Positions 17,544-41,629 of a stretch of DNA of 64,000 nucleotides are shown here, in pieces. The stretch covers positions 1-64,000 of the forward strand of contig NW_021836314.1 of the NCBI RefSeq assembly GCF_006345805.1, in the 5' to 3' direction. Source of the stretch: Octopus sinensis. Lineage: Eukaryota. Numbering within the stretch: the first letter of the stretch is position 1; each line of letters starts with the position of its first letter. The notes beneath the pieces were generated by a model, which saw nothing but the letters and a program-made list of their open reading frames with translations, was not told where the DNA came from and did not search any database. The position numbers and the translations under genes were made by a program.

Positions 17544-17574
17544 ATATATTATATATATATATGCGAGTGCTTGA

Positions 17575-18720: not shown

Positions 18721-18729
18721 GCACCTTGA

Positions 18730-20069: not shown

Positions 20070-20156
20070 AAATAGATATATCATGAATAGAGTCCAGTAG
20101 TTGATTCGTCGATATATTAAGGAAATGCGAAAAAAATGTCATCGTTCAGAAGATAT
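20070..20156 (-). pseudogene. Degenerate LRR pseudo-exon
   Basis: Flank at 20158-20240 is homologous to the A-type acceptor flank, but the acceptor reads cttcat instead of cttcag. Residual YLLND...TGLYS..YL with stops. Confidence 0.5.
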
Positions 20157-20634: not shown

Positions 20635-20665
<31 letters not shown>

Positions 20666-21054
20666 AAGAAGAAGAAGAAGAAGAAGAACAAAAACTTCAA
20701 CAACAATAACAAAAAAATTATCTCGGTGGAATTGTGGATAAATAACCACACGGCACCACAGAATCAACAGAACAATGTGAAATAAAATAGTAGCTAAAAC
20801 TTATATTAATAGTGCAGATACAGACATACATATGAACATACACATATATTTTCAGGAATAACATTTTTATGCAGACAATTATCAACTGACAGTCATTGAC
20901 ATGTTCAGACTCAATCAAATAAATATAACACGAATATGAGAACTGAATATGATTTACAGTAATAGAGAGTGAGAAAACATGGAAATAAGGGGATATTAAA
21001 TTTAAAGACATAGTATATTCCTCATGTATAAACGACAACATTGAAAGAACTTAC

Positions 21055-21126
21055 AATTCCTCTAAGCTGTGAAGGCCTTGAAACATCTCCTTTTCAATCC
21101 TTGAAATTTTATTGTTGCCAAGGTTT
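21055..21126 (-). CDS. LRR cassette exon A1
   Basis: cttcag|...TT|gtaagt, 72 bp; NLGNNKISRIEKEMFQGLHSLEEL. Confidence 0.95.
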
Positions 21127-24032
21127 CTGAAGCAGGAAACAATATTGGTTAGATTGACATAGTGTGAATTGCGATAACATATTCAATATTGTTCTTTATG
21201 AAAAGGGAAAAAATATAGGAAAATAACACAAGAAGAAGAGGAACAGGAAAGAGATTGAGAAGAAGAAGAAGCCAAAGAAGAAGGGGAGGTGGGGAAGGGG
21301 AAACGGAGAAGACAAGGAGGAAGTGGAGGGGGAGAAGAAGTAGAAGAAGGAGGAGTTGGAGGAGGAGGAACGAAGGAGAGGAAAATGGCTGAGGACGGAG
21401 TAGGACAAGGAGATGAAGGAGGGGTGGGGGAAATAGGAGGAGGAGCAGAGGGTAGAGTAGAAGAAAAAGATGTAAATTATTAAAAAGAGGAGGAGGGTGA
21501 GGAGACGAAGAAGAATAGGCAAAAGAGAAGAAAAAGAAGAAGAAGAGGAAAAAGAAGAAGAAGAAGAAAGCGATGAAGAAGGAGGAGGAAGAGGAGAAGG
21601 AGGGAGAGAATTACAAAAAAGAAGATGAGAAAAAAAAGAAGAAGGAGGAGAAGGAGGAGAAGTAGAAGAAAGTAGAAGTAGGAGTGGAAGAAAAAGAGGA
21701 AGAAGAAAGAGGATAAGGAGGGGGAGGGGAAAGTAAGAATTACAAGAAGGAGGAGGAGGAGGAGAAGAAGAAGAAGAAGAAGAAGAAGAAGCAGAAGAAG
21801 AAAAAGGAGGAGGAGTAGAGGTAGAAGAAGAGGAAGAAGAACAGGAAGCTGTAGAAGAAAGAGAAGACGGAAGAAGAGGCAAGAGGTGGAGGAGGAGGAT
21901 GAAGGGGAAGAAGAAGTTAGAGAAAAGAAAAAAAGAAGAAGAAGGAGGAGGAGAATAACAAAATGAAACTATGAAGAAGAAAGAGCCGAAAGAGGAGAAG
22001 TAGATGAAGAAATAGAAAGTAGAATAAGAAGAAGTAGAGGAAAAAGAAAAATAAGGAGGAAGATGAGGAGGAGAAGTAGAAGAAGAAGAAGAAGAAGAAG
22101 AAGAAGAAGAAGAAGAAGGAGAAGAAGAAGAAGAAGAAGAAGAAGAAGAGGAGGAGGAGGAGGAGGAGAAGAAGAAGAAGTAGAAGTAGAAGAAGAAAGA
22201 AGAAGAAGAAGAAGAAAAGAAGACGAAGAACAAGAAGAAGGAAAAGGAGGAGGATGAAGGGGAAGAAGAAGAGAAAGGAGGAGGATGAGAAGAATATGAA
22301 GAAGTAGAAAGTGTAGAAGAGGTAGAAGACGAAGAAAAAAAGAAGTCGTAGAAAGAGAAGAAGAAAAGGAAAATGATGGAGGAAGACGGGGAACAGAAGT
22401 AGAAGAAGAAGACGAAGAAGGAGAAGAAGAAGGAGAATAAGAATTAGAAGAAGAAGAAGAAAAAGGAGCAAGAGAGGAGAGGGGTGGAGATGGACGAGAA
22501 TTACAAGAAGAAAAAGGAGGGGGTGGGGTGGTGAGAGGAGGAAGTGAATTACAAGAAGTAAATGTAGATGAAGAAGAAGAGAATAAAATTAGAAGAAGAA
22601 AAGAAAGAGGAGGAGGTGGAGGAGGAGAAGAAGAAGAATAGTTTAAAAGAAGGAGAAGAAGAAGAAATTGAAGAAGAGAAGAAAAAGAAGGAGGAGGATG
22701 ATGAGCAGGAGGTGAGGCGGAGGAAGGAGAAGACGAAGAAGAAGAAGAAGAAGAAGAAGAATAGTTTAAAAGAAGAAGGAGAAGAAGAAGAAAATGAAGA
22801 AGAAGAGAAGAAAGTAAGGATAGGAGGAGGCATGAGGTTGGCTAAGGAATAAGAAGAAGGAAGACTAAGACTAAGAATATAAGAAGAAGACGACGACGAC
22901 GAAGAAGAAGAATAAGAAGAAGAAGAGGAGGAAGAAGAAGAAGAATAGAAGAAGAAGAAGAAGAAGAAAAAGACGAAGACGAAGAAGAAGAAAGGAAGAA
23001 GAAGAAGGGGAGTAGAAGAAAAAGAAGAAGAAGAAGAAGAAAGAAGTTATATTGAAAATCATGGTGTTGAAGACGAAACTGAAATTGTTCTTAAAATATC
23101 AGGAAATAATTCAAGGATAGATCGATAAATTTTGGGCGAGAAGACATGGCTGAAAAATCATGGAATATACGGAATCAGAAATCAACATATTCAAATGCAC
23201 TCATACGCATTCTTATATTCATAGTATCAACGACGGAATGCGGTATGCACACTCACATCACACATATTCCCACTCACCCTTGTGGAAATATGGTGAGAGA
23301 GATTATTTCATATCGCTTCATTGTCAGAAGAATATTAGAAAACACACGCTTACAAGAAATATATCAGCAGTTTAATTGTATCAGGCCAAATATTCGAGCT
23401 TACAAGTACAGTATGTATTTCAGGTTTACAGATAGAATGTATGTGACTATATTATTCGAATATATATTTTCCGCTTCCAATTTAGTTGCTCTATTACATA
23501 AATAACGTGAAGTGAATGACAAAATTCGAAGTTGAATGATAATATCGAAACATGAAGGAGAATATTGAAATAGGAAATGGAGGAGGATGTAAAATATAAA
23601 ATAAAGGAATAATATATTCACATTTCACACAGAACTACACTTATATATGAACATACACAAATACTTCAGCTAAAAATATTTGATGCAAACATGTAAACTC
23701 ACAAACGTTACCATTTCTAATACAAATTCATATCAAAATCATTGAAATTGGGGAACAAAATGAGTTATTTAGATGCGAATTGAAACGAAGCAAGTACAAG
23801 AAAGGAACATTATATTTTTCCTATTATTTCACATTTTCTCTCAAATTCTCTCTCTTTCTTTCACATTGTCTCGCTCTCTCATATTCTTTTTGTATATTCC
23901 TAAATCGTGTTGATTCTACAAATTCGAATTGATTTTGTTTGGTGGAGTCTGAAATTTTATACATTTGTGAGCTTATATATCAGCATCAATTATTACATTC
24001 GGAAAATAATATCAAGAAACTGAAGAACTTAC

Positions 24033-24104
24033 AATTCTTTTAAATTGCAAAGCCCCGTGAATACACCTTCTTTGATGGTTGCAATGTTGTTGGAACCAAT
24101 ATTT
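24033..24104 (-). CDS. LRR cassette exon B1
   Basis: ctatag|...TT|gtaagt, 72 bp; NIGSNNIATIKEGVFTGLCNLKEL. Confidence 0.95.
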
Positions 24105-25348
24105 CTATAGCAGTAAAGAAAGAGTAAAATAGATTATATGGAAAATATTTGTGATACGACATCAAACACTGTGACTTCAGAATGAAAGGAAGAAAAAGAA
24201 GAAATATAACGAAGAAGAAAAAGAAGAAGAAGGAGAAGAAGAAGAAAAGAAGAAGAAGAAGAAGGTAGATGAAGAGAAGAAGAAGAATAAAAAGAAGAAT
24301 AAGGAGGAGGAAAAGGAGAAGAAGAAGAAGAAGAAGAAGTAGAAGAAAACGTAGAAGAAGAAAGGAGAAGATAAAGGAGAAGAAGACCTAGAAGAAGAAA
24401 AAGAAGAAGAGGAGGCGGAGGAGGCGGAGGAGGCGGAGGAGGCGGAGGAGGCGGAGGAGTCGGAGGTGGAGGAGAGGTGGGGATGTTAGGAGGAGGACAA
24501 AGGAATGGATGACTGAGGAGGGGCAGCTGGGGATAGCAGCAGAAGGAGCAGGAAGAGCAGGAGGATGAGTATAAGAGGAAGAATTGGAAGAGAATGGAAA
24601 AGAGGGAGACCATTGAAGAAGCAGAAAGTACAGAGAAGAAAAAGAACAAGAAAAAAAGAAGGCAAAGAAGAAGACAAAGAAGAAGTAGAACAGGAAGAAA
24701 AGTAACAAGAAGAAGAAGAAGATGAAGTAGAAGAAGAATAAGAGGAAGAAGAAGAAGAAGAAGACGACGAAGAAGAAGAGGAACATGCAGGAGATGAAGA
24801 AGGAAAGAAGAAGACGAAGAAGATGAAGAAGAAAAATAGAAGAAGAGAAAGAAGAAATTAAAGAAAAAGGAGGATGAGTAGGACGAAGAGGGGAGGTTGA
24901 GGAGAAGAATTGCAATAAGAAGAAGAAGAAAAAGGAGAAGGAGGTGGAGGAGGAGGGGGAATAGGAGAATTACAAGAAGAAGAACAAAACAACAACAATA
25001 ACAAAAAAATTATCTCGGTGGAAGTGTGGATAAATAACCACACGGCACCACAGAATCAACAGAACAATGTGAAATAAAATAGTAGCTAAAACTTATATTA
25101 ATAGTGCAGATACATACATACATATGAACATACACATATATATTTTCAGGAATAACATTTTTATGCAGACAATTATCAACTGACAGTCATTGACATGTTC
25201 AGACTCAATCAAATAAATATAAGACGAATATGAGAACTGAATATGATTTACAGTAATAGAGAGTGAGAAAACATGGAAATAAGGGGATATTAAATTTAAA
25301 GACATAGTATATTCCTCATGTATAAACGACAACATTGAATGAACTTAC

Positions 25349-25420
25349 AATATCTCTAAGTTGTGAAGGCCTTGAAACATCTCTTTTTCAATCCTTGAAA
25401 TTTTATTGAAGGAAAGAGAT
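25349..25420 (-). CDS. LRR cassette exon A2
   Basis: cttcag|...TT|gtaagt, 72 bp; SLSFNKISRIEKEMFQGLHNLEIL. Confidence 0.95.
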
Positions 25421-26454: not shown

Positions 26455-26526
26455 AATTTCTCTAAGTTGTGAAGGCCTTGAAACATCTCTTTTTCAATCC
26501 TTGAAATCTTATTGTTGCGAAGACCT
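26455..26526 (-). CDS. LRR cassette exon A3
   Basis: cttcag|...TT|gtaagt, 72 bp; GLRNNKISRIEKEMFQGLHNLEKL. Confidence 0.95.
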
Positions 26527-29153
26527 CTGAAGCAGGAAACAATATTGGTTAGACTGACATAGTGTGAATTGCGATAACATATTCAATATTGTTCTTTATG
26601 AAAAAGAACAAAATTATAGGAAAATAATATGAGAGGAAGAGGAACAGGAAAGAGATTGAGGAGAAGAAGAAGCCAAAGAAGAAGGGGAGGAGGGGAAGGG
26701 GAAACGGGGAAGACAAGGAGGAAGTGGAGGGGGAAAAGAAGTAGAAGAAGGAGGAGTTGGAGGAGAAGGAACGAAGGGGAGGAAAAAGGCTGAGGACGGA
26801 GTAGAACAAGGAGATGCAGGAGGGGTGAGGGAAATAGGAGGAGGAGCAGAGGGTAGAGTAGAAGAAAAATATGTAAATTATTAAAAAGAGGAGGAGGGTG
26901 AGGAGACGAAGAAGAATAGGTAAAAGAGAAGAAAAAGGAAAAGAAGAGGAAAAAGAAGAAGCAGAAGAAGGCGATGAAGAAGGAGGAGGAAGAGGAGAAG
27001 GAGGGGGAGAATTACAAAAAAGAAGATGAGAAGAAGAAGAAAGAGGATGAGAAGGAGAAGTAGAAGAAAGTAGAAGAAAGAGGATAAGGAGGGGGAGGGG
27101 AAAGGAAGAATTACAAGATGAGGAGAAGAAGAAGAAGAAGCAGAAGAAGAAAAGGAGGAGTAGAGGTAGAAGAAGAAGAAGAAGAACAGGAAGCAGTAGA
27201 AGAAAGAGAAGAAGAAGGAAGAGGGGGCAAGAGGTGGAGGAGGAGGATGAAGGGGAAGAAGAAGTTAGAGAAAAAGAAAAAAAGAAGAAGGAGGAGGAGA
27301 ATAACAAAATGAAAATATGAAGAAGAAAGAGCCGAAAGAGGAGAAGTAGACGAAGAAATAGAAAGTAGAATAAGAAGTAGAAGAAAATGAAATAGAAGAA
27401 AGAGAAGTTGAAGAAAAAGAAAAATAAGGAGGAAGATGAGGAGAAGTACAAGAAGAAGAAGAAGAAGAAGAAGAAGGAGGAGGAGGAGGAAGAGACGTAG
27501 AAGCAGAAGTAGAAAAAGAAGAAAAAGAAGAAGAAAAAAGAAGACGAATAAGAAGAAGGAAGAGGAGGAGGATGAAGGCGAAGAAGAAGAGAAAGGAGGA
27601 GGAGGAGAAGAATATGAAGAAGTATAAAGTGTAGAAGAAGTAGAAGACGAAAAAAAAAGAAGTGGTAGAAAGAGAAGAAGAAAAGGAAAAAGATGGAGGA
27701 AGACGGGGAACAGAAGTAGAAGAAGAAGACGAAGAAGGAGAAGAACAAGGAGAATAAGAATAAGAATTAGAAGAAGAAGAAGAAAAAGGAGCAAGAGAGG
27801 AGAGGGGTGGAGGTGGACGAGAATTACAAGAAGAAAAAGGAGGGGTGGGGTGGTGAGAGGAGGAAGTGAATTACAAGAAGTAAATGTAGATGAAGAAGAA
27901 GAGAATAAAATTAGAAGAAGAAAAGAAAGAGGAGGAGGTGGAGGAGGAGAAGAAGAAGAATAGTTTAAAAGAAGGAGAAGAAGAAGAAATTGAAGAAGAG
28001 AAGAAAAAGAAGGAGGAGGATGATGAGCAGGAGGTGAGGCGGAGGAAGGAGAAGAAGACGAAGAAGAAGAAGAAGAAGAAGAAGAAGAAGACGACGACGA
28101 CGAAGAAGAAGTAAAAGAAGAAGGAGAAGAAGAAAAGAAGAAGAAGAAGAAGAAGAAAGAAGAAGAAGAAGAAGAAGAAGATACATTAAAAATCATTGTC
28201 TTCAAGACGACCCTTAAAATGTTTTCATAATATCAGGAAATAATTCAAGGATAGAATGAAAAATTTTGGGCGAGAAGACATGGCTGAAAAATCATGGAAT
28301 ATACGGAATCAGAAATCAACATATTCAAATGCACTCATACGCATTCTTATATTCACAGTATCAACGACGGAATGCGCTCTGCACACTCACATCACACATA
28401 TTCCCACTCACCCTTGCGGAAATATGGTGAGAGAGATTATTTATTTAATATCGCTTCATTGTCACAAGAATATTAGAAAACACACGCTTACAAGAAATAT
28501 ATCAGCAGTTTAATTGTATCAAGCCAAGTATTCCAGCTTATAAGTACAGTAAGTATTTCAGGTTTACAGATAGATGTATGTGACTATATTATTCGAATAT
28601 ATATTTTCCGCTTCCAATTCAGTTGCTCTATTACATAAATAACGTGAAGTGAATGACAAAATTCGAAGTTGAATGATAATATCGAAACACGAAGGAGAAT
28701 ATTGAAATAAGAAATGGAGGAGGATGTAAAATATAAAATAAAGGAATAATATAGTCACATTTCACACAGAACTACACTTATATATGAACATACACATATA
28801 CTTCAGCTAAAAATGTAACCTCACAAACGTTACCATTTCTAATACAAATTCATATCAAAACCTTTGAAATTTGGGGAACAAAAAAGAGTTAATGAGATGC
28901 GAATTGAAACAAAGCAACTACAAGAAAGGAACATTATATTTTTCCTATTATTTCACTTTCTCTCTCAAATTCTCTCTCTTTCTTTCACATTGTCTCGCTC
29001 TCTCATATTCTCTTTGTATCTTCCTAAATCGTGTTCATTCTTCAAATTCGAATTGATTTTGTTTGGTGCAGTCTGAAATATTATATATTTGTGAGCTTAT
29101 ATATCAGCATCATTACTTTCGGAAAATAATATCAAGAAATTGAACAAACTTAC

Positions 29154-29225
29154 AATGTCTTTAAATTCGAAAGGCCCGTGAATAAACCTTCTTTGATGGT
29201 TGAAATGTTGTTCCATCTCAGATCT
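29154..29225 (-). CDS. LRR cassette exon B2
   Basis: ctatag|...TT|gtaagt, 72 bp; DLRWNNISTIKEGLFTGLSNLKTL. Confidence 0.95.
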
Positions 29226-30390
29226 CTATAGCAGTAAAGAAAGAGTAAAATAGATTATATGGAAAATATATGTGATACGACACCAAACACTGTGATTTCA
29301 GAATGAAAGGAAGAAAAAGAAGAAAGATAACGAAGAAAAAGAAGAAGTAGACGGAGGAGGAGGAGAAGAAGTAGAAGAAGAAGATGAGTAGAAGAAGAAA
29401 GTAGAAGAAGGAGAATTGGGCAGGAGGTGGAGGGGGCGGAAGAGAAGGTGTAGTGGGGAGGTTAGGAGGAGGACCAAGGAATGGATGACTGAGGAGCGGC
29501 AGCTGGGGGTAGAAGCAGAAGGAGCAGGAAGAGCATGAGAATGAGAATAAGAGGAAGAATTGGCAGAGAATGGAAAAGAGGGAGACAAGTGACGGAGCAG
29601 AAAGTACAGAGAAGAAAAAGAAGAAGAAAAAAAGAAGAAGAAGAAGAAGAAGAAGAAGAAGAAGAAAAATAGAAGAAGAATACAAATAAGTAGAAAAATA
29701 AGAAGAAAAAAAGAAGGCAAAGAAGAAGACAAAAAAGAAGTAGAACACGAAGAAAAGTAACAAGAAGAAGAAGTAGATGAAGTAGAAGAAGAAGAAGACG
29801 ACGAAGAAGAAGAGGAACATGTAGGAGATGAAGAGGGAAAGAAGAAGACGAAGAAGATGAAAAAAAAGAAAAATAGAAGAAGAGAAAGAAGAAATTGAAG
29901 AAAGAGTAGGATGAGTAGGACGAAGAGGGGAGGTTGAGGAGGAGAATTGCAATAAGAAGAAGAAAAAGGAGGAGAAGGAGGTGGAGCAGGAGGGAGAATA
30001 GGAGAATTACAAGAAGAAGAACAAAACAACAACAACAACAATAAAAAAAATTTATTTCGGTGGAAGTGTGGATAAATAACCACACGGCACCACAGAATCA
30101 AGAGAACAATGTGTAAGAAAATAGTAGCTAAAACTTATATTAATAGTGCAGATACATACATACATATGAACATACACATATATATTTGCAGGAATTACAT
30201 TTTTATGCAGACAATTATCAACTGACAGTCATTGACATGTTCAGACTCAATCAAATAAATATAAGACGAATATGAGAACTGAATATGATTTACAGTAATA
30301 GAGAGTGAGAAAACATGGAAATAAGGGGATATTAAATTTAAAGACATAGTATATTCCTCATGTATAAACGACAACATTGAATGAACTTAC

Positions 30391-30462
30391 AATTTCTCTA
30401 AGTTGTGAAGGCCTTGAAACATCTCCTTTTCAATCCTTGAAATTTTATTGCTGTCAAGAGAT
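30391..30462 (-). CDS. LRR cassette exon A4
   Basis: cttcag|...TT|gtaagt, 72 bp; SLDSNKISRIEKEMFQGLHNLEKL. Confidence 0.95.
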
Positions 30463-31284: not shown

Positions 31285-31315
<31 letters not shown>

Positions 31316-32456
31316 AAGGAGGAGGAGGAAAAGTAGAAGAAGAAAAGAACAAAAAGAAGAAGAAGGAGAAGAAGAAGACGACGACGACGAAGAAGAAGTA
31401 GAAGAAGAAGAAGGAGAAGAAGAAGAAGAAGAAGTAAAAGAAGAAGAAGAAGAAGAAGAAGAAGAAGAAGAAGATACGTTGAAAATCATGGTGTTCAAGA
31501 CGAAACTGAAAATGTTGTCATAATATCAGGAAATAATTCAAGGATAGAGCGGTAAATTTTGGGCGAGAAGACATGGCTGAAAAATCAGGGAATATACGGA
31601 ATCAGAAATCAACATATTCAAACGCACTCATTCGCATTCTTATAGTCATAGTATCAACGACGGAATGCGCTATGCACACTTACATCACTCATAATCCCAC
31701 TCACACTTGTGGAAATATGGTGAGAGAGATTATTTATTTCATATCGCTTCATTGTCAGAAGAATATTAGAAAACACACGCTTACAAGAAATATATCAGCA
31801 GTTTAATTGTATCAGGCCAAATATTCCAGCTTACAAGTACAGAAAGTATTTCAGGTTTACAGATAGAATGTATGTGACTATATTATTCGAATATATTTTC
31901 CGCTTCCACTTCAGTTACATAAATAACGTGAAGTGAATGACAAAATTCGAAGTTGAATGATAATATCGAAACACGAAGGAGAATATTGAAATAAGAAATG
32001 GAGGAGGATGTAAAATATAAAATAAAGGAATAATATAGTCACATTTCACACAGAACTACACTTATATATGAACATACACATATACTTCAGCTAAAAGTAT
32101 TTGATGCAAACATGTAAACTCACAAACGTTACCATTTCTAATACAAATTCATATCAAAACCTTTGAAATTTGGGGAACAAAAATGAGTTATTGAGATGCA
32201 AATTGAAACAAAGCAACTACAATAAAGGAACATTGTATTTTTCCTATTATTTCACTTTCTCTCTCAAATTCTCTCTCTTTCTTTCACATTGTCTCGCTCT
32301 CTCATATTCTTTTTGTATCTTCCTAAATCGTATTCATTCTACAAATTCGAATTGATTTTGTTTGGTGCAGTCTGAAAGTTTATACATTTGTGAGCTTATA
32401 TGTCAGCATCAATTATAACTTTCGGAAAATAGTATCAAGAAATTAAACGAACTTAC

Positions 32457-32528
32457 AATTCTTTTAAATTTGAAAGCCCCGTGAATGTACCTTCTTTGAT
32501 GGTTGAAATGTTGTTCTCGTACAGATCT
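32457..32528 (-). CDS. LRR cassette exon B3
   Basis: ctatag|...TT|gtaagt, 72 bp; DLYENNISTIKEGTFTGLSNLKEL. Confidence 0.95.
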
Positions 32529-33830
32529 CTATAGCAGTAAAGAAAGAGTAAAATAGATTATATGGAAAATATTTGTGATTCGATATCAAACACTGTGACT
32601 TCAGAATGAAAGGAAGAAAAAGAAGAAAGATAACGAAGAAGAAGAAGAAGAAGAAGAAGAAGAAGAAGAAGAAGAAGAAGATTAAAACAGGAAAAGAAGA
32701 AGAAGAAGAAAGGAAAAGAAGAAGAAAAAGAAAGAAAAAGGAGAAGAAGAAGCAGTAGTAGAAGAAAAAGAAAAGTAGAAGAAGGGGAATTAGGGACGAG
32801 GTGGAGGATGTGGGGGTGGAGCAGAGGTGGGGAGGTTAGGAGGAGGACAAAGGAAGGGATGCCTGTTCAGGGGGCCGCTGAGGGTAGCAGCTGAAGGAGC
32901 AGGAAGAGCTGGAGACTGAGAATAAGAGGGAGAATTGGCAGAGAATGGAAAAGAGGGAGACCAGTGACGGAGCATAAAGTACAGAGAAGAAAAAGAAGAA
33001 GAAGAAGACAAAGAAGAAGAAGAAGAACAAAATTAGAAGAGGAAGAAGGAGGAGGAGAAGAAGTAGAAGAAGAAGCAGAAGAAGAAGAAAACAAAGAAAA
33101 TTAAGAAGAAGAAGAAAAAAGAAGGCAAAGAAGAAGTAGAACACGAAGAAAAGTAACAAGAAGAAGAATAAGTAGAAGAAGAAGAAGAGGAAGAAGAAGA
33201 AGACAAAGAAAAGAAGAAGAAGAAGAAGAGGAAGAAGAAGAAGACGACGAAGAAAAGGAACATGAAGGAGATGGAGAAGGAAAGAAGAAGACGAAGAAGA
33301 TGAAGAAGAAGAAAAATAGAAGAAGAGGAAAAAGAAATTGAAGAAAAAGGAGGATGAGTAGGACGAAGAGGGCATGTTGAGGAGGAGAATTGCAATAAGA
33401 AGAAGAAAATGAGGAGAAGGAGGTGGAGGAGGAGGGGGAATAGGAGAATTACAAGAAGAAGAACAAAACAACAACAACAACAACAAAAATATTATCTCGG
33501 TGGAAGTGTGGATAAATAACCACACGGCACCACAGAATCAAGAGAACAATGTGTAAGAAAATAGTAGCTAAAACTTATATTAATAGTGCAGATACAGACA
33601 TACATATGAACATACACATATATATTTTCAGGAATAACATTTTTATGCAGACAATTATCAACTGACAGTCATTGACATGTTCAGACTCAATCAAATAAAT
33701 ATAAGACGAATATGAGAACTGAATATGATTTACAGTAATAGAGAGTGAGAAAACATGGAAATAAGGGGATATTAAATTTAAAGACATAGTATATTCCTCA
33801 TGTATAAACGACAACATTGAAAGAACTTAC

Positions 33831-33902
33831 AATTCCTCTAAGCTGTGAAGGCCTTGAAACATCTCCTTTTCAATCCTTGAAATTTTATTGTAGGAAAGAT
33901 CT
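33831..33902 (-). CDS. LRR cassette exon A5
   Basis: cttcag|...TT|gtaagt, 72 bp; DLSYNKISRIEKEMFQGLHSLEEL. Confidence 0.95.
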
Positions 33903-35555: not shown

Positions 35556-35627
35556 ACTGTTTTTAAATTGGAAAGCCCCGTGAATACACCTTCTTTGATG
35601 GTTGAAATGTTGTTCCCGAAAAGATAT
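35556..35627 (-). CDS. LRR cassette exon B4
   Basis: ctatag|...GT|gtaagt, 72 bp; YLFGNNISTIKEGVFTGLSNLKTV. Confidence 0.95.
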
Positions 35628-37610
35628 CTATAGCAGTAAAGAAAGAGTAAAATAGATTATATGGAAAATATTTGTGATACGACATCAAACACTGTGACAT
35701 CTGAATGAAAGGAAGAAAAAGAAGAAAGATAACGAAGAAGAAAAGGAAGAAGAAGGAGGAGGAGGAGGCGAAGAGGAAGAAAAGTAGAAGAAGAAGAATT
35801 AGTAGAAGAAGAAAGGAGAAGAGGTAGTAGAAGAAAAAGAAGCGAAAGAAGGAATACCTGGAAAAAGGAGGAGGAGGATGATAAAAGGGAAGAAGAAGTA
35901 GAAGAAAAAGTAAAAGAAGAAGAAGAAGGGGATGGGAGGAAAAGAATAACAAGAAGAAGAAGATAAATATAAGAAAGACGAGGAGGAGGAGGAGGAGAAG
36001 TAGGTGAAGAAGTAGAAATAAGAAGAAGAAGAAGGAGAAGAAGAACAACAACAAGTCGAAATAGAAGGAGGATGAGGAGGGGGAGGGGAAGAAGAAATAT
36101 TGCAAGAAGAAGGAAGGAAAGAACAGGAAGAAGAAGATGTAGAAGTAGTAGAAGCAAGAAAAAGAAGAAAGATAACGAAGAAGAAAAGGAAGAAGAAGGA
36201 GGAGGAGGAGGAGGCGAAGAGGAAGAAAAGTAGAAGAAGAAGAATTAGTAGAAGAAGAAAGGAGAAGAGGTAGTAGAAGAAAAAGAAGCGAAAGAAGGAA
36301 TACCTGGAAAAAGGAGGAGGAGGATGATAAAAGGGAAGAAGAAGTAGAAGAAAAAGTAAAAGAAGAAGAAGAAGGGGATGGGAGGAAAAGAATAACAAGA
36401 AGAAGAAGATAAATATAAGAAAGACGAGGAGGAGGAGGAGGAGAAGTAGATGAAGAAGTAGAAATAAGAAGAAGAAGAAGGAGAAGAAGAACAACAACAA
36501 GTCGAAATAGAAGGAGGATGAGGAGGGGGAGGGGAAGAAGAAATATTGCAAGAAGAAGGAAGGAAAGAACAGGAAGAAGAAGATGTAGAAGTAGTAGAAG
36601 CAAGAAAAAGAAGAAGAAGATGAAGGAGGTGGAGGAGAAGGAGATAGAGAATAACAAAAACAGAAGTGAAGAAGAAGAAGGAGGAGGAGGAGGAGTAGAA
36701 GAAGAAGTAGAAAGAAGAAGAGGAAGAAAAAAAGAAAAAGACAAAGAAGAAGAAGAAGGAAGGGGAGGAAAAAGGAGGAGGAGGAGTGTGAAGGAGGAGA
36801 ATAAGTAGGAGAACATGAAAAAGAAGAAGAAGATGAAGGAGGAGGAGGTTGAGAATAACAAAAAGAAGAATATAAGAAGAAGAAAGAGGAGTAGGAGGAG
36901 AAGTAGATGAAGAAGTAGAAAGTAGTGGTAGAAGAAGACATAGAAGAAGAAGAAAAAAGAAGTAGAAGAATGAGAAGAAGAAATGAAAAAGAAGAAGGAA
37001 GGAACAGAAGAAGAAGAATTAGAAGAAGAAGCAGAAGAAGAAGAAAAAGTTGCAGGAGAGGAGGGGAGGAGGAGAATAACAAGAAGAAAAAGGAGGAGGC
37101 GCGGAGAGGATTGGGTAGAAAAAAAGTAGAGGAAAAAAGAAGTAGAAGAAGGAAGAGGAAAAAGGAGGAGGAAGGAGATGAAAGGGAAAAAGTAGGGGTA
37201 GAAGAAAAAGAAGAAGAAGAAGAACAAGGAGGAGGAGGAGGAGGAGGAGTAGATGAAGAAGTTGAAAGTAGAAGAGGAAGAAGTGGAAGAAGAAGAAAAA
37301 AGGAGAAGCGAGAGAAGAAGAAGAAGAAAAAGAAGAAGAAGAAGGAGGAGAAGAAGGTGCAGCAGGAGGAGAGGAACAGAAGGAAGAAGAAGAAAAAGAA
37401 GAAGAAGAAGAAGAAGAAGAAGAAGAACAAAGGAGAAGAAGGAGCAGCAGGAGGAGAGGAAGAGAAGGAAGAAGAAGAAAAAGAAGAAGAAGAAGAAGGA
37501 AAATAAGAAGAAGAAGAAGGAAAAGAAGAAGAAGAAGGCAGAATACGAAATGACAAAAAGATGAAGAAGAAGGCGGAAAAGGAGAAATAGAATAAGAAAA
37601 AGAACAAAAA

Positions 37611-37642
<32 letters not shown>

Positions 37643-38847
37643 AAAATATAAAGCGGGAGAAGAAGAAGAAGAAGAAGAACAACAACAACAACAAAAAGAA
37701 GAAAAAGAGGAAGAAGAAGAAGAAGAAGTGGAAAAAGAAAAAGATAAAGAGGGAGAAGAAGAAGAACAACAGAAGAAGAAAAAGATAAAGAGGGAGAAGA
37801 AGAAGAAGAAGAAGGAGAAGAAAAAGAAGAAGAAAAAGAAGAAGAAGAAGAAGAAGAAGAAGATGACAATTTAAAAATGATGGTGTTCATGATGAAACTG
37901 AAAATGTTCTCATAATATCAGGAAATAATTCAAGGATAGAGCGATAAATTTTGGGCGAGAAGACATGGCTGAAAAATCAGGGAATATACGGAATCAGAAA
38001 TCAACATATTCAAATGCACTCATACGCAATCTTATATTCATAGTATCAACGACGGAATGCGGTATGCACACTTACATCACACATATTCCCACTCACCTTT
38101 GTGGAAACATGGTGAGAGAGATTATTTATTTCATATCGCTTCATTGTCACAAGAATATTAGAAAACACACGCTTACAAGAAATATATCAGCAGTTTAATT
38201 TATCAGGCCAAATATTCCAGCTTACAAGTACAGTAAGTATTTCAGGTTTACAGATAGAATGTATGTGACTATATTATTCGAATATATATTTTCCGCTTCC
38301 ACTTCAGTTACATAAATAACGTGAAGTGAATGACAAAATTCGAAGTTGAATGATAATATCGAAACACGAAGGAGAATATTGAAATAAGAAATGGAGGAGG
38401 ATGTAAAATATAAAATAAAGGAATAATATAGTCACATTTCACACAGAACTACACTTATATATGAACATACACATATACTTCAGGTAAAAATATTTGATGC
38501 AAACATGTAAACTCACAAACGTTACCATTTCTAATACAAATTCATATCAAAATCATTGAAATTTGGGAACAAAAATGAGTTATTGAGATGCGAATTGAAA
38601 CAAAGCAACTACAATAAAGGAACATTATATTTTTCCTATTATTTCACTTTCTCTCTTAAATTCTCTCTCTTTTTTCACATTGTCTCGCTCTCTCCTATTC
38701 TCTTTGTATCTTCCTAAATCGTATTCATTTTACAAATTTGAATTGATTTTGTTCGGTGTAGTCTGAAATATTATACATTTGTGAGCTTATATATCAGCAT
38801 CAATTATTACGTTCGGAAAATAATATCAAGAAACTGAACGAACTTAC

Positions 38848-38919
38848 AATTCTTTTAAATGTGAAAGCCCCGTGAATGCTCCTTCTTTGATGGTTGCAAT
38901 GTTGTTGTTCCACAGTTCT
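38848..38919 (-). CDS. LRR cassette exon B5
   Basis: ctatag|...TT|gtaagt, 72 bp; ELWNNNIATIKEGAFTGLSHLKEL. Confidence 0.95.
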
Positions 38920-39758
38920 CTATAGCAGTAAAGAAAGAGTAAATTAGATTATATGGAAAAAATATGTGATACGACATCAAACACAGTGACATCTGAATGA
39001 AAGGAAGAAAAAGAAGAAAGATAACGAAGAAGAAGAAGAAGAAGAAGAAGAAGGGAAGAAGAAGAAGAAGAAGGAGAAGAAGAAGAAGAAGAAGAAGAAG
39101 AAGAAGAAGAGGAAGTAAAAGAAGACGAAGACAAAGAAAAGGAAGAAGAAGAAGAAGAAGAGGAAATAGAAGAAGACGACAAAGAAGACGGAACATGAAG
39201 GAGATGAAGAAGGAAAGAAGAAGAGGAAGTATAAAAAGAAGAAAAAGAAGAAGAGAAAGAAGAAATTGAAGAAAAAGGAGGATGAGTAGGACGAAGAGGG
39301 GAGGTTGAGGAGGAGAATTGCAATAAGAAGAAGAAAATTAGGAGAAGGAGGTGGACGAGGAGGGGGAATAGGAGAATTACAAGAAGAAGAACAAAAACAA
39401 CAACAACAACAACAAAAATATTATCTCGGTGGAAGTGTGGATAAATAACCACACGGAACCTCAGAATCAACAGAACAATGTGTAAGAAAATAGTAGCTAA
39501 AACTTATATTAATAGTGCAGATACAGACATACATATGAACATACACATATATATTTTCAGGAATAACATTTTTATGCAGACAATTATCAACTGACAGTCA
39601 TTGACATTTCAGACTCAATCAAATAAATATAAGACGAATATGAGAACTGAATATGATTTACAGTAATAGAGAGTGAGAAAACATGGAAATAAGGGGATAT
39701 TAAATTTAAAGACATAGTATATTCCTCATGTATAAACGACAACATTGAAAGAACTTAC

Positions 39759-39830
39759 AATTTCTCTAAGCTGTGAAGGCCTTGAAACATCTCTTTTTCA
39801 ATCCTTGAAATTTTATTGTAGCCAAGATCT
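39759..39830 (-). CDS. LRR cassette exon A6
   Basis: cttcag|...TT|gtaagt, 72 bp, phase 2-2; DLGYNKISRIEKEMFQGLHSLEKL. Confidence 0.95.
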
Positions 39831-41557
39831 CTGAAGCAGGAAACAATATTGGTTAGATTAACATAGTGTGAATTGCGATAACATATTCAATATTGTTCTT
39901 TATGGAAGGAGACAAAATTATAGGAAAATATACAGAAGAAGAGGAACGAAAGAGATTAAGGAGAAGAAGAAGAAGAAGAAGAAGAAGAAGAAGAAGAAGA
40001 AGAAAGAGAGGAGGGGAGGGAAAAGAAGAAGTCAAGGAGGAAGAGAAGGGGGGAGAAGAAGTAGAAGAAGGAGGAGTTGGAGGAGGAGGGGAGGTGAAGA
40101 AGGATGAGGACAGGGAAGGAAAGGAGATGCAGGAGGGGGAGGAAGGGAGGAAAATAGGAGGAGGTGCAGAGGATAGAGTATAAGAAGATATAGAAGATTA
40201 AAAAGTGGAGGAAGAATAAGATGAAGTAGAAGGGAGAAGAAAGGGGAGGAGGAGAAGAAGAGAAGAGGAAGAAGAGAGGAGAAGAAGAAGAAGGAGAGAA
40301 GAGAAAGAAGAAGTAAAAGGAGAAGAAGAGCGGAAGAAAATGAAGAAGAAGAAGAAGCATGAAAAAAGAAGGAGAAAAAGAAAAAGAAGGAGAAGAAGGA
40401 AGAAGAGGAAAATAGGTGGAGGCGGAGGAGTAGGAGGAAGCGGAAGGAGAAGAAGAGGACAAAGGAGAAGGAGGAGGAAGAGAAGTAGGAGAAGAAGAAG
40501 AAGAAGAAGAAGAAGAAGAAGAAGAAGAAGAAGAAGAAGAAGAAGAAAAGAAGAAGAAGAAGATGACACTTTGAATATCATGGTGTTGAAGACGAAACTG
40601 AAATTGTTCTTAAAATATCAGGAAATAATTCAAGGATAGATCGATAAATTTTGGGCGAGAAGACATGGCTGAAAAATCAGGGAATATACGGAATCAGAAA
40701 TCAACATATTCAAATGCACTCATACGCATTCTGATATTCATAGTATCAACGACGGAATGCGGTATGAACACTCACATCACACATATTCCCAATCACACTT
40801 GTGGAAATATGGTGAGAGAGATTATTTATTTCATATCGCTTCATTGTCACAAAAATATTAGAAAACACACGCTTACAAGAAATATATCAGCAGTTTAATT
40901 GTATCAGGCCAAATATTCCAGCTTACATGTACAGTAAGTATTTCAGGTTTACAGATAGAATGTATGTGACTATATTATTCGAATATATATTTCCCGCTTC
41001 CAATTCAGTTGCTCTATTACATAAATAACATGAAGTGAATGATAAAATTCGAAGTTGAATGATAATATCGAAACACGAAGGAGAATATTGAAATAAGAAA
41101 TGGAGGAGGATGCAAAATATAAATAAAGGAATAATATAGTCACATTTCACACAGAACTACACTTATATATGAACATACACATATACTTCAGCTAAAAATA
41201 TTTGATGCAAACATGTAAACTCACAAACGTTACCATTTCTAATACAAATTCATATCAAAATCATTGAAATTTGGGGAACAAAACTGAGTTATTGAGATGC
41301 GAATTGAAACAAAGCAACTACAATAAAGGAACATTATATTTTTCCTATTATTTCACTTTCTCCCCCAAATTCTCTCTCTTTCTTTCACATTGTCTCGCTC
41401 TCTCCTATTCTCTTTGTATCTTCCTAAATCTTGTTCATTCTACAAATTTGAATTGATTTTGTTTGGTTCAGTCTGAAATTTTATACATTTGTGAGCTTAT
41501 ATATCAGCATCAATTAATACTTTTGGATAATAGTATCAAGAAATTAAACGAACTTAC

Positions 41558-41629
41558 ACTTTTTTTTAAATTGGAAAGCCCCGTGAATACACCTTCTTTG
41601 ATGGTTGAATGTTGTTCTCGGAAAGATAT
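41558..41629 (-). CDS. LRR cassette exon B6 (72 bp; compensating -1/+1 homopolymer indels give an in-frame TAA as assembled)
   Basis: ctatag|A...GT|gtaagt; restores to YLSENNISTIKEGVFTGLSNLKKV by comparison with the five sister B exons. Confidence 0.85.

What the first reader, a model, noticed from the sequence alone, without database searches (positions are those of the whole stretch)
21055..41629. Hidden array of 12 interchangeable 72-bp LRR exons inside apparent GAA junk: candidate variable LRR receptor system
Seen: twelve exons of exactly 72 bp, each bounded by ag|...|gtaagt, all phase 2-2, each coding one 24-aa LRR. In transcript order they are B-A-B-B-A-B-A-B-A-A-B-A, between a signal peptide/LRRNT exon (45502) and an LRRCT exon (13584). 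The duplicated unit includes the introns. Established: modular LRR diversification underlies lamprey VLRs, and single-repeat exon shuffling has been described in Ectocarpus ROCO LRR-GTPase and NB-ARC-TPR genes. Inference: this is an actively expanding and contracting, repeat-swapping extracellular recognition receptor (immune, allorecognition or gamete recognition) in a cephalopod-like genome.
Basis: partly seen in the sequence, partly recalled or inferred. Interest (0 to 1): 0.95.

Follow-up and report, generated by a model that had tools for sequence, protein, structure and literature searches.

The report
Octopus LRR exon-cassette array, decaying copy
The twelve 72-bp leucine-rich-repeat exons are real, but they form an ordinary germline gene already in the public Octopus sinensis annotation: a truncated copy from an octopus family of cell-surface adhesion receptors, enlarged by exon duplication, with no sign of a rearranging immune-receptor system.

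Summary
Observation confirmed.

The first cassette carries an in-frame TAA. A broken 13th LRR exon (70 nt) lies at 16971-16902. The gene continues to the window start, with four more frame-breaking indels.

The window is about 99% identical to an Octopus sinensis scaffold. RefSeq annotates this gene there as 'slit homolog 1 protein-like', with 13 isoforms in 24-aa steps. Relatives are octopod LRR–GPS–7TM adhesion GPCRs, matching an octopus-specific expansion published in 2019.

Two cassette types were amplified together with their introns. Ligand-facing positions 2, 3, 5, 7 and 8 are hypervariable, while framework codons are conserved.

Both assemblies hold the same 12 cassettes in the same order, with one apparent ~440-bp gene-conversion tract. 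A ~93%-identical O. vulgaris locus has a rearranged array.

So turnover is germline and evolutionary. Nothing points to VLR-like assembly or an immune role. One-LRR-per-72-nt-exon modularity is already known from Slit, NLRs and Ectocarpus ROCO. Verdict: new member of a known kind, moderate-to-low interest.

The parts
45502..45692 (-). Coding part of exon 1: ATG at 45692, signal peptide plus LRRNT (MFHHVVSYRRSLVLILCTILFLETQA|DSDICKICTCNS…NVEYL). It ends with 2 nt of a split codon. The exon's acceptor lies at about 45713/45712, so a 5'UTR exon lies further upstream.
   Evidence: 100% identical to L001 7064-7254
41558..41629 (-). Cassette N1, a pseudo-exon. It is 72 nt with ag|…|gtaagt, but an internal -1 (T run) and +1 (A run) put a TAA in frame. 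In the O. sinensis scaffold it is 73 nt.
39759..39830 (-). Cassette K2 (DLGYNKISRIEKEMFQGLHSLEK)
38848..38919 (-). Cassette N3 (ELWNNNIATIKEGAFTGLSHLKE)
35556..35627 (-). Cassette N4 (YLFGNNISTIKEGVFTGLSNLKT)
33831..33902 (-). Cassette K5 (DLSYNKISRIEKEMFQGLHSLEE). It differs at 9 of 72 nt from the O. sinensis scaffold and sits at the 3' end of a ~440-bp tract of dense differences that looks like gene conversion.
32457..32528 (-). Cassette N6 (DLYENNISTIKEGTFTGLSNLKE)
30391..30462 (-). Cassette K7 (SLDSNKISRIEKEMFQGLHNLEK)
29154..29225 (-). Cassette N8 (DLRWNNISTIKEGLFTGLSNLKT)
26455..26526 (-). Cassette K9 (GLRNNKISRIEKEMFQGLHNLEK)
25349..25420 (-). Cassette K10 (SLSFNKISRIEKEMFQGLHNLEI). It is the last LRR exon used in every retrieved RefSeq isoform.
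24033..24104 (-). Cassette N11 (NIGSNNIATIKEGVFTGLCNLKE). It is intact but absent from every retrieved RefSeq isoform.
21055..21126 (-). Cassette K12 (NLGNNKISRIEKEMFQGLHSLEE). It is intact but absent from every retrieved RefSeq isoform.
16902..16971 (-). 13th LRR exon, a broken pre-LRRCT repeat (YLNSNPIEKYEDGA…). It is 70 nt where the O. vulgaris locus L002 has 72, because of two 1-nt deletions.
13584..13741 (-). LRRCT exon (YLENNNLMKCGCHLPAFVKYIKKVYNRTVAVSGTCQEGSGKRIPILDYSQCQ). Its 3' end is phase 1.
8814..8903 (-). First exon of a 10-cysteine domain of unclassified fold. This haplotype has +4 nt relative to L002 and -2 nt relative to L001, which creates a TGA at 8841-8839. The ORF therefore ends …CSGIICNE*.
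6670..6852 (-). Second exon of the cysteine-rich domain (…CTGCCVGHLCN). A 1-nt deletion near its 3' end (AAC-AGAAT), shared with the O. sinensis scaffold, shifts the frame.
5599..5680 (-). First exon of the following domain, which has a ferredoxin-like (SEA-like?) fold. It carries a 1-nt deletion relative to L002.
4557..4609 (-). Second exon of the ferredoxin-like domain (MEHDLSTVTGTFRVEDCG), intact.
950..1103 (-). Third exon of the ferredoxin-like domain (…NRNKIFAIYCTVFSEMTESQLRRNIS…KFIDE), with a 1-nt deletion relative to L002. The gene then runs off the window start.
41713..42228 (-). (GAA)n on the plus strand, which is (TTC)n on the gene strand, upstream of N1.
40211..40563 (-). (TTC)n tract upstream of K2.
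39004..39264 (-). (TTC)n tract upstream of N3.
35712..37863 (-). (TTC)n tract upstream of N4. It is the longest at 2.15 kb and includes a 446-bp internal duplication.
32985..33336 (-). (TTC)n tract upstream of N6.
30987..31474 (-). (TTC)n tract upstream of K7.
29610..29893 (-). (TTC)n tract upstream of N8.
26904..28181 (-). (TTC)n tract upstream of K9.
24189..24410 (-). (TTC)n tract upstream of N11.
21503..23046 (-). (TTC)n tract upstream of K12.
19582..20688 (-). (TTC)n tract downstream of K12, with no cassette following it.

Best explanation
This is the 5' half of an ordinary, germline-encoded, multi-exon Octopus gene. RefSeq annotates it in O. sinensis as 'slit homolog 1 protein-like'. It belongs to a family, found here almost only in octopods, with the architecture LRRNT-LRR(n)-LRRCT, cysteine-rich domain, ferredoxin-like domain, (HRM), GAIN/GPS, 7TM. 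These are adhesion GPCRs, named 'ADGRG6/GPR126-like' in public annotations.

Shown:
- Each LRR is one 72-nt, phase-2/2 exon.
- Two cassette types (N and K) were amplified in tandem together with their introns.
- Intron flanks and framework codons stay similar between copies.
- The residues that face the ligand on the concave beta-sheet (LRR positions 2, 3, 5, 7 and 8) are strongly diversified.
- Two near-identical assemblies share the same array and differ by one apparent conversion tract.
- A ~93%-identical locus has a rearranged array.
- This copy carries several frame-breaking lesions. The longest possible product in this haplotype is a secreted SP-LRRNT-11 LRR-LRRCT protein of about 400 aa, and only if cassette N1 and the 13th LRR exon are skipped.

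Inferred:
- The mechanism of growth was unequal crossing-over between the homologous cassette introns.
- The (GAA·TTC)n tract in nearly every intron may help this recombination.
- Inter-cassette gene conversion homogenises everything except the binding patch.
- The diversity is evolutionary, with no somatic diversification.
- The locus is a degenerating or 3'-truncated paralogue of a functional adhesion GPCR, and is not a dedicated variable-receptor system.
For: Gene structure and exon phase.

Cassettes include introns. K-type 3' flanks are 97-99% identical within the window, and N-type flanks 90-98%.

Hypervariable patch:
- Pairwise differences per site are 0.39 (N) and 0.28 (K) in exon nt 1-16, against 0.04-0.09 in flanking introns.
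- Variable columns, patch against introns, give Fisher p = 6e-5 (N) and 0.0025 (K).
- K cassettes have dN 0.58 / dS 0.14 at positions 2, 3, 5, 7 and 8, against dN 0.014 / dS 0.10 elsewhere. N cassettes have 0.78/0.71 against 0.085/0.17.
- In the AlphaFold model the LRR part has pLDDT of about 86-98 per 10-residue block, one block at 77. A strand recurs every 24 residues at LRR positions 3-5.

Identity: window 52749→1 aligns colinearly to O. sinensis scaffold VCDQ01004985.1 at 98.9-99.8%. RefSeq isoforms X1-X13 are 409, 385, 361 and 337 aa long.

Family:
- All 38 hits to the post-LRR region are from Octopus.
- Only 31 cluster representatives among 1.84 billion match the cysteine-rich plus ferredoxin-like module.
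- Single chains carry LRR + GPS + 7tm_2, and one also has a Death domain. The eight named clusters are six from O. bimaculoides or O. vulgaris and one from Argonauta, all adhesion GPCRs, plus a weak Nucella hit. One further cluster comes from Logan transcript contigs of unnamed origin.
- This domain set matches the octopus-specific adhesion-GPCR 'group 3' (LRR in 5 of 22 members, Death in one) of PMC6408891.

Stability and turnover: both assemblies have the same 12 cassettes in the same order. The K5 tract runs from -372 to +69, with no difference in the next ~620 nt. O. vulgaris locus L002 has ~93% colinear flanks but 11 cassettes in another order, N/K hybrids, and two cassettes whose flanks are 100% identical.

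Lesions. There are 6 indels in 632 nt of downstream exons, against 2 in 1,213 nt of exon 1 + cassettes + LRRCT (p = 0.02).
Against: - No transcript data could be examined here, so which exons are really spliced, and in which tissues, is unknown.
- RefSeq lists 13 isoforms. If these are real, regulated combinatorial skipping would be more than 'ordinary'.
- Framework codons are under purifying selection (omega about 0.14 for K). The 11 intact cassettes have no lesion, while the downstream exons have six. This could mean the LRR part is still functional as a secreted protein rather than decaying. It could equally mean the cassettes are simply young.
- Only two haplotypes or assemblies were compared, so copy-number polymorphism in populations is untested.
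- The roles of (GAA)n tracts and unequal crossing-over are inferred and not demonstrated.
- Assignment to Ritschard et al.'s 'group 3' rests on matching domain content and not on their sequence list.
Confidence: 0.75

Rival explanations
1. A working diversity generator based on splicing. The phase-symmetric cassettes are skipped or included combinatorially, as with NLRP3 LRR exon skipping or, more loosely, Dscam1. One locus would then give many secreted LRR proteins with different binding surfaces. The long (UUC)n tracts upstream of each exon would act as binding platforms for splicing repressors.
For: - There are 13 RefSeq isoforms at this locus in 24-aa steps, at least 3 more retrieved at a second O. 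sinensis scaffold, and at least 7 at a paralogue.
- All cassettes are 72 nt and phase 2-2, with strong splice sites.
- Framework positions are under purifying selection.
- Exon modularity enabling LRR alternative splicing is documented for human NLRs and discussed for Slit (PMC6642158).
Against: - Five isoforms at this locus (X2, X4, X7, X8, X13) and one at the second scaffold contain hybrid modules. These require GT-AG or AT-AC junctions inside exons, placed within stretches identical between cassettes. That pattern is typical of reverse-transcriptase template switching, read mis-placement on repeats, or a recombinant allele.
- No transcript-derived protein for this locus turned up.
- The locus carries stops and frameshifts, so gene models must skip exons to stay open.
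- No docking/selector-type RNA pairing was seen, only weak AT-rich inverted repeats.
- The proposed role of the (UUC)n tracts is pure inference.
Confidence: 0.12
2. A fully dead pseudogene. The whole locus is a decaying duplicate of an LRR adhesion GPCR. The hypervariable patch was inherited from functional ancestors and from conversion by functional paralogues. The RefSeq isoforms are then byproducts of gene prediction on a repetitive, damaged locus.
For: - There are eight indels in coding exons: an in-frame stop in N1, a broken 13th exon, a premature TGA 21 codons after LRRCT, and three more frameshifts.
- The premature stop lies upstream of several exon junctions, so a spliced transcript would be a nonsense-mediated-decay target. 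This follows from established knowledge and was not tested here.
- Hybrid-junction isoforms.
Against: - The O. sinensis scaffold keeps the cysteine-rich exon 1 open, giving a 409-aa LRR plus Cys-rich product.
- Eleven cassettes, exon 1 and LRRCT are all intact with perfect splice sites.
- Framework omega is 0.14-0.5.
- Every retrieved RefSeq model skips the intact N11 and K12. An ORF-maximising predictor would not do that without evidence.
Confidence: 0.3
3. A VLR-like somatic assembly system. The cassettes would be donor modules copied into an incomplete receptor gene in immune cells.
For: Only the general resemblance: many similar LRR modules at one locus, with variable concave-face residues.
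Against: - The germline gene is complete. SP/LRRNT, cassettes and LRRCT are all in one orientation and in frame.
- Every cassette has canonical ag/gtaagt sites.
- Two independent assemblies have the same array.
- Relatives are adhesion GPCRs.
- By sequence, the LRRs are closest to IGFALS, TLR3, LGR4/5 and LRRC15 rather than to VLRs.
Confidence: 0.02
4. An assembly artefact, meaning an array mis-assembled from a shorter repeat.
For: The region is highly repetitive, with long (GAA)n tracts. Homopolymer-type indels differ between the two assemblies, as in N1.
Against: - An independent O. sinensis scaffold reproduces all 12 cassettes, their distinct binding patches, their order and the intron lengths to within 23 bp.
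- Every cassette has a unique 5' patch.
Confidence: 0.03

Closest known systems
Octopus-specific adhesion-GPCR expansion ('group 3' of Ritschard et al. 2019, PMC6408891; annotated as ADGRG6/GPR126-like)
   Same: - The LRRCT, cysteine-rich and ferredoxin-like exons of this gene are 60-92% identical to Octopus proteins.
- Through overlapping models and single chains (e.g. O. bimaculoides XP_014788728), those proteins carry LRR + GPS + 7tm_2 + Death.
- This is the domain set the paper reports. It also reports co-localised genes and positive selection.
   Different: - This copy has lost the reading frame before the GAIN/GPS/7TM part, which also lies outside the window.
- The paper analysed 7TM sequences of O. 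bimaculoides and C. minor. It did not describe the one-LRR-per-exon cassette arrays or their intron-inclusive amplification.
- Membership of its exact 'group 3' was not checked against its sequence list.
Ectocarpus ROCO LRR-GTPase exon shuffling (Zambounis et al. 2012, PMC3341825; also PMC11378527)
   Same: - Each LRR is one 72-nt (24-aa) exon.
- Both show tandem exon duplication and shuffling.
- Both have inactivated exons and pseudogenes among the loci.
- Positive selection falls on solvent-exposed LRR residues.
   Different: - The Ectocarpus genes are from a brown alga and encode cytoplasmic LRR-Roc-COR proteins, not a metazoan secreted or GPCR ectodomain.
- There is no homology beyond the LRR motif, and the exon register within the LRR differs.
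- In octopus the introns are kilobases long and full of (GAA)n.
Exon-modular LRR genes of animals (Slit, NLRP3 and other NLRs; Hoss et al. 2019, PMC6642158, citing Little et al. 2002)
   Same: Strict exon modularity, with short repeated LRR-encoding exons whose symmetric phase allows in-frame skipping. RefSeq's own names for this gene are 'slit homolog 1/2-like'. The closest solved LRR domains include LGR4/5.
   Different: Those arrays are old and fixed, and their introns are unrelated. Here the cassettes, including their introns, are 90-99% identical, so the array is very young or is being homogenised.
Lamprey/hagfish variable lymphocyte receptors
   Same: An LRRNT, 24-residue LRR modules and an LRRCT, with variation concentrated on the concave-face positions.
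   Different: VLR germline genes are incomplete and are completed somatically by copying from flanking cassettes that are not exons. This description rests on established knowledge. Here the germline gene is complete and conventionally spliced. There is no evidence of somatic change.

Membership tests
Exon-modular LRR array (Slit / NLR / Ectocarpus ROCO type) | One LRR per exon, with exon length a multiple of 3 (72 nt) and identical intron phase on both sides | tested here: met
   Twelve 72-nt exons, all phase 2-2, all ag|…|gtaagt.
Exon-modular LRR array (Slit / NLR / Ectocarpus ROCO type) | Recent tandem duplication or shuffling of single-repeat exons | tested here: met
   Intron flanks are 90-99% identical within a cassette type. 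The array differs between the window and the ~93%-identical locus L002.
Exon-modular LRR array (Slit / NLR / Ectocarpus ROCO type) | Diversifying change at solvent-exposed concave-face residues | tested here: met
   K cassettes have dN 0.58 / dS 0.14 at positions 2, 3, 5, 7 and 8, against 0.014/0.10 elsewhere. The patch is 4-7 times more divergent than the introns. For N cassettes dS is saturated at these positions (omega about 1.1).
Exon-modular LRR array (Slit / NLR / Ectocarpus ROCO type) | Alternative splicing of LRR exons | tested here: inconclusive
   There are 13 RefSeq isoforms in 24-aa steps. Five at this locus rest on intra-exonic junctions within identical stretches, and no reads were available.
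Octopod LRR adhesion GPCR family (ADGRG6/GPR126-like; Ritschard group 3) | Homology of the ectodomain (LRRCT + cysteine-rich + ferredoxin-like module) to family members | tested here: met
   Identity is 86-92% to O. sinensis and O. vulgaris members over the aligned parts. Colinear exons are present in the window.
Octopod LRR adhesion GPCR family (ADGRG6/GPR126-like; Ritschard group 3) | GAIN/GPS autoproteolysis domain and 7TM (7tm_2) in the same gene | tested here: not met
   The window ends in the ferredoxin-like domain. The reading frame is already broken by a TGA at 8841-8839 and by three further 1-nt deletions. Relatives do have GPS + 7tm_2. This copy is therefore a truncated derivative and not a receptor.
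VLR-type somatically assembled LRR receptor | Incomplete germline gene with a non-coding intervening sequence in place of the LRR modules | tested here: not met
   SP/LRRNT, cassettes and LRRCT are colinear, in one orientation and in frame when spliced.
VLR-type somatically assembled LRR receptor | Donor cassettes that are not exons (no splice sites, partial modules, both orientations) | tested here: not met
   All 12 cassettes are full 72-nt modules with canonical splice sites, all on the minus strand.
VLR-type somatically assembled LRR receptor | Somatic, lineage-specific rearrangement dependent on an AID/APOBEC-like deaminase | not testable with these tools
   This needs DNA from different tissues of one animal. 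Two assemblies carry identical arrays.
Dscam-type mutually exclusive exon clusters | Only one exon of a cluster is included per transcript, enforced by docking/selector RNA pairing | tested here: not met
   At this locus the RefSeq isoforms include 5-8 cassettes at once. Only weak (73-79%) AT-rich inverted repeats occur in the array.

The most novel reading that the evidence does not exclude
The N/K cassette arrays at this and the paralogous Octopus loci may together form a germline-plus-splicing diversity system for LRR ectodomains. In that reading:
- Individuals differ in cassette content, through unequal crossing-over and conversion between cassettes and between paralogues.
- Cells choose subsets of the phase-symmetric exons.
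- The result is a large repertoire of adhesion-GPCR or secreted LRR binding surfaces.
- These surfaces would serve recognition, for instance neuronal or sucker chemotactile recognition, or immune recognition.

The hybrid modules in RefSeq models would then reflect real recombinant alleles or real intra-exonic splicing, not artefacts.
Probability: 0.1. Interest if true: 0.75.

Novelty: new member of a known kind. Interest (0 to 1): 0.33.

Why it matters
Taken alone, the locus is a clear animal example of a process better documented in brown algae and plants. An LRR binding surface is built and re-tuned by duplicating single-repeat exons with their introns. Homogenisation acts everywhere except at the ligand-facing residues.

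It also gives a structural reason to revisit the octopus-specific adhesion-GPCR expansion already linked to arm nerve cord, suckers and skin. The variable part of these receptors may be their LRR cassette arrays, which fragmented gene models have hidden so far.

It does not provide evidence for a new kind of immune receptor diversification in cephalopods. This particular copy is damaged.

A practical lesson follows. Near-identical 72-nt exons produce gene models with intra-exonic 'introns', so isoform counts at such loci need long-read, template-switch-controlled confirmation.

Tried and rejected
- Fetching the second O. sinensis scaffold (76,762 bp; isoforms XP_036355417-19, ORF ending …CNE* like the window) failed. 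Only the longest isoform of a gene is indexed, and my reconstructed X1 was not accepted. The same happened for the chromosome-level paralogue of P0001. A three-haplotype comparison was therefore not possible.
- The third homology search, with a pure N-K module query meant to surface transcript-derived fragments, returned nothing at 1e-30. This was probably a filter effect on the repetitive query. It is uninformative.
- Classifying the 10-cysteine domain failed. By eye its CCxxxLCN ending recalls Ly6/uPAR three-finger domains. There is no Pfam hit even at E = 10, no PDB sequence hit, and AlphaFold pLDDT is below 50. I leave it unclassified.
- The next domain gives a confident beta-alpha-beta-beta-alpha-beta model (pLDDT 65-92). 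Foldseek returns only generic ferredoxin-like folds, with nothing at E ≤ 1e-3. 'SEA-like' therefore remains a guess from its position in adhesion-GPCR ectodomains.
- A search for docking/selector-like inverted repeats in the array found only weak AT-rich pairs.
- Literature searches found no paper describing this locus or LRR cassette arrays in cephalopods.
- Assembly artefact was considered and rejected, because an independent scaffold reproduces the array.

Full report
**1.

A pattern search for AG-N72-GTAAGT gives 14 matches in the window. Block-shuffled sequence gives 2.9 on average and 8 at most.

Each translates in one frame to a 24-residue leucine-rich repeat.

There are two types. N is xLxxNNI(S/A)TIKEGxFTGLSNLK. 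K is xLxxNKISRIEKEMFQGLH(S/N)LE.

Every exon begins with the last base and ends with the first two bases of a split codon, so all introns are phase 2. The signal-peptide/LRRNT exon (ATG at 45692, last base 45502) and the LRRCT exon (13741-13584) join the array in frame.

Introns are 839-3,220 nt long. On the plus strand, 49% of 20001-42300 lies in 60-nt windows that are at least 90% purine, against 1% elsewhere. TRF reports eleven (GAA)n tracts of 0.2-2.2 kb, one in nearly every intron. A tBLASTn scan finds no further N/K cassette in the window.

**2.

- The first cassette (41558-41629) has a 1-nt deletion in a T run and a 1-nt insertion in an A run. It keeps its 72 nt, but 14 codons are out of frame and a TAA appears.
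- A 13th LRR exon lies at 16971-16902. It is the 'NPIEKYEDGAFLFLPSIV' repeat that precedes LRRCT in the paralogues. It is 70 nt where the related O. vulgaris locus has 72.
- The gene continues below 13584. Two exons encode a 10-cysteine domain (8903-8814, 6852-6670), and three encode a following domain (5680-5599, 4609-4557, 1103-950). The gene then runs off the window.
- This haplotype has a TGA at 8841-8839, 21 codons after LRRCT. Three further 1-nt deletions follow, in the exons at 6852-6670, 5680-5599 and 1103-950.

Downstream exons carry 6 indels in 632 nt. Exon 1, the cassettes and LRRCT together carry 2 in 1,213 nt (p = 0.02).

**3. Where it comes from, and that it is already annotated**

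The reverse complement of window 52749-1 aligns colinearly, at 98.9-99.8% identity, to the whole of Octopus sinensis scaffold VCDQ01004985.1.

RefSeq annotates one gene there, 'slit homolog 1 protein-like'. It has isoforms X1-X13 of 409, 385, 361 and 337 residues, which are steps of exactly 24 aa.

A second O. sinensis scaffold (76,762 bp) carries three more retrieved isoforms. Their ORF ends …CNE*, like the window. A paralogue on a 28.9-Mb chromosome has at least seven retrieved isoforms of 525, 501 and 477 aa.

So the array is not hidden from automated annotation. I found no paper that describes it.

**4. How much to trust the isoforms**

All 13 isoforms splice K10 directly to LRRCT. None uses the intact N11 and K12 or the broken 13th exon.

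Five contain 'hybrid' modules that exist in neither genome as one exon, for example YLSENNISTIKEG-AFTGLSHLKE. I reproduced each hybrid as the 5' part of one N exon joined to the 3' part of a later N exon.

- For X2, X4, X7 and X13, and for one isoform of the second scaffold, the only canonical option is a GT-AG junction after nt 38 (AAG|GTGTAT … GAAG|G).
- For X8 the only canonical option is an AT-AC junction.

These junctions sit inside stretches that are identical between cassettes. That pattern is expected from three sources: template switching during reverse transcription, mis-placed reads on repeats, or a transcript from a recombinant allele. It is not good evidence for regulated splicing. 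I could not examine reads, so this stays open.

**5. What gene family it is**

The LRR domain is a typical extracellular 24-residue LRR. The best solved relatives by sequence are IGFALS, TLR3, LGR4/5, LRRC15, LRIG1 and LINGO1, not VLRs.

The region after the LRRs finds 38 proteins in the large database, all from O. sinensis, O. vulgaris or O. bimaculoides.

An exhaustive search of 1.84 billion cluster representatives, using the cysteine-rich plus following domain, finds only 31. Single chains among them combine LRR, GPS and 7tm_2, and one also has a Death domain.

The clusters that carry a name are O. bimaculoides and O. vulgaris 'adhesion GPCR G6/GPR126-like' or 'A3'. There is also a weaker Argonauta hit (E = 7e-8) and a marginal gastropod (Nucella) hit (E = 4e-4). 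One further cluster comes from Logan transcript contigs of unnamed origin.

This domain set matches the octopus-specific adhesion-GPCR expansion described by Ritschard et al. 2019. Their 'group 3' has LRR in 5 of 22 members and a Death domain in one. They report co-localised genes, positive selection, and highest expression in axial nerve cord, suckers and skin (PMC6408891). I did not check their sequence list, so this assignment is by architecture.

The cysteine-rich domain could not be classified. The next domain models as a ferredoxin-like beta-alpha-beta-beta-alpha-beta fold, but it has no specific structural match.

**6. How the array evolved**

Within a cassette type, the aligned introns differ at 0.04-0.09 of sites. 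The first 16 nt of the exon differ at 0.28-0.39. By variable columns, Fisher p = 6e-5 for N and 0.0025 for K.

Mapped onto the LRR consensus L1xxL4xL6xxN9, the variable codons are positions 5, 7 and 8 at the exon's 5' end and positions 2 and 3 at its 3' end. One further site lies before the conserved Phe in N cassettes. Positions 2, 3, 5, 7 and 8 are the classical concave-face, ligand-contacting positions. This rests on established knowledge.

The AlphaFold model of the 409-aa O. sinensis product puts a strand every 24 residues at positions 3-5. Its LRR part has pLDDT of about 86-98 per 10-residue block, with one block at 77.

| Cassette type | dN / dS at positions 2, 3, 5, 7, 8 | dN / dS elsewhere |
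|---|---|---|
| K | 0.58 / 0.14 | 0.014 / 0.10 |
| N | 0.78 / 0.71 | 0.085 / 0.17 |

The framework is therefore conserved and the binding patch diversified. The high dS in the N patch is compatible with either of two histories: an old patch kept while the flanks were homogenised, or repeated replacement of the patch.

**7. Stability against turnover**

The O. sinensis scaffold has the same 12 cassettes in the same order. Intron lengths are within 23 bp.

Nine cassettes are identical in sequence between the two. N1 and N11 each differ at one position. K5 differs at 9 of 72 nt.

Around K5 the differences between the two assemblies are packed into about 440 bp, from -372 to +69 relative to the exon start. 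None occur in the next ~620 nt. Many window alleles in this tract match cassette K2 or K12. This looks like an inter-cassette gene-conversion tract.

An O. vulgaris locus (OX597815.1, L002) is colinear with the window at 91-94% through the unique flanks and downstream exons. Its array differs in four ways:

- It holds 11 cassettes in another order.
- It includes N/K hybrid exons.
- It has a 69-nt cassette.
- Two of its cassettes have 300-nt flanks that are 100% identical.

K-type flanks within the window (97-99%) are more alike than the two loci are to each other (~93%). Duplication or homogenisation therefore continued after the loci separated.

Array turnover is real on an evolutionary scale. 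It is not visible between the two near-identical assemblies.

**8. Mechanism (best reading, confidence 0.75)**

This is a conventional germline gene. Its LRR ectodomain grew by unequal crossing-over between homologous cassette introns. It is kept partly homogeneous by gene conversion, while selection maintains different ligand-facing residues in each repeat.

The (GAA·TTC)n tracts are a plausible aid to recombination. On the pre-mRNA they form very long pyrimidine tracts upstream of each exon. Both points are inference.

This particular copy has lost its GAIN/GPS/7TM-encoding continuity. In the window's haplotype the best product is a secreted SP-LRRNT-11 LRR-LRRCT protein of about 400 aa, and only if N1 and the 13th exon are skipped. 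In the O. sinensis scaffold the product also keeps the cysteine-rich domain (409 aa). It may be a soluble derivative or simply a pseudogene in progress.

**9. Rivals**

- Regulated combinatorial exon skipping as a diversity generator: 0.12.
- A fully dead pseudogene: 0.3. This is nested within the main reading as to structure.
- VLR-like somatic assembly: 0.02.
- Assembly artefact: 0.03.

**10. Comparison with known systems, and verdict**

The closest functional analogue is the exon shuffling of Ectocarpus ROCO genes. There too each LRR is a single 72-nt exon, broken exons and pseudogenes are common, and exposed residues are positively selected (PMC3341825).

Exon modularity of animal LRR domains, and its use in alternative splicing, is documented for NLRP3 and noted for Slit (PMC6642158).

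The defining features of VLRs and of Dscam-type clusters were tested and not met.

The feature is a new member of a known kind, already present in automated annotation, and this copy is damaged. Interest is 0.33.

The most novel reading not excluded is a polymorphic, combinatorially spliced LRR repertoire across the paralogous loci. I give it about 0.1 probability.

Noticed in passing
window 16902-16971 (minus strand): A 13th LRR exon (YLNSNPIEKYEDGA…) lies between the array and LRRCT. It is 70 nt where the O. vulgaris locus has 72 (L002 ~28621-28692). The finding did not include it.
   Followed up: yes
window 950-8903 (minus strand): The same gene continues with exons for a 10-cysteine domain and a ferredoxin-like domain. 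They carry a premature TGA (8841-8839) and three 1-nt deletions. The cysteine-rich domain has no Pfam or PDB match and models poorly. It may be an undescribed, mainly octopod domain, since only 31 cluster representatives in 1.84 billion match this module.
   Followed up: partly
L001 (O. sinensis VCDQ01004985.1) 11131-20298 and RefSeq isoforms X2, X4, X7, X8, X13: These RefSeq models contain hybrid LRR modules. They can only be made by GT-AG or AT-AC junctions placed inside two different N exons, within identical sequence. They are either prediction or reverse-transcription artefacts, or traces of recombinant alleles.
   Followed up: partly
window 33831-34274 against L001 ~18500-18947: A ~440-bp patch differs at about 35 sites between two otherwise ~99%-identical assemblies. 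It ends at the 3' end of exon K5, and many window alleles match cassettes K2 or K12. This looks like an inter-cassette gene-conversion tract.
   Followed up: yes
L002 (O. vulgaris OX597815.1) 7732-24905: This colinear locus (~93% identity) has a rearranged array. It has N/K hybrid exons (YLFNNNISRIEKEMFQGLH…), a 69-nt cassette, one cassette with 'aa' in place of the 'ag' acceptor, and two cassettes with 100% identical 300-nt flanks.
   Followed up: partly
window 62137-63129 (-), 3457-3786 (+): These are reverse-transcriptase (RVT_1) ORF fragments of retroelements, at E = 8.8e-22 and 4e-5.
   Followed up: partly
window 54530-55453 (-) and 55434-56129 (+): Two nearly identical ORFs sit head to head as an inverted duplication. 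By eye they carry a GIY-YIG-like motif suggestive of a Penelope-like element, but Pfam did not confirm it.
   Followed up: partly
window 57880-57918 (minus strand): A short ORF, MSFNKLMVHLDSK, resembles the N-terminus of an O. vulgaris paralogue model (P0017). It may be an upstream alternative first exon about 12 kb 5' of exon 1.
   Followed up: no
window 40964-41145: A 38-nt imperfect inverted repeat has arms 106 nt apart in the intron after N1. One arm recurs in other N-type introns. It may be a small MITE-like insertion.
   Followed up: no
window 28477-28548 and 40862-40933 (plus strand): Two AG-N72-GTAAGT matches lie on the opposite strand, inside the duplicated N-type intron. They do not encode LRRs and are chance matches that were duplicated along with the cassette.
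   Followed up: yes
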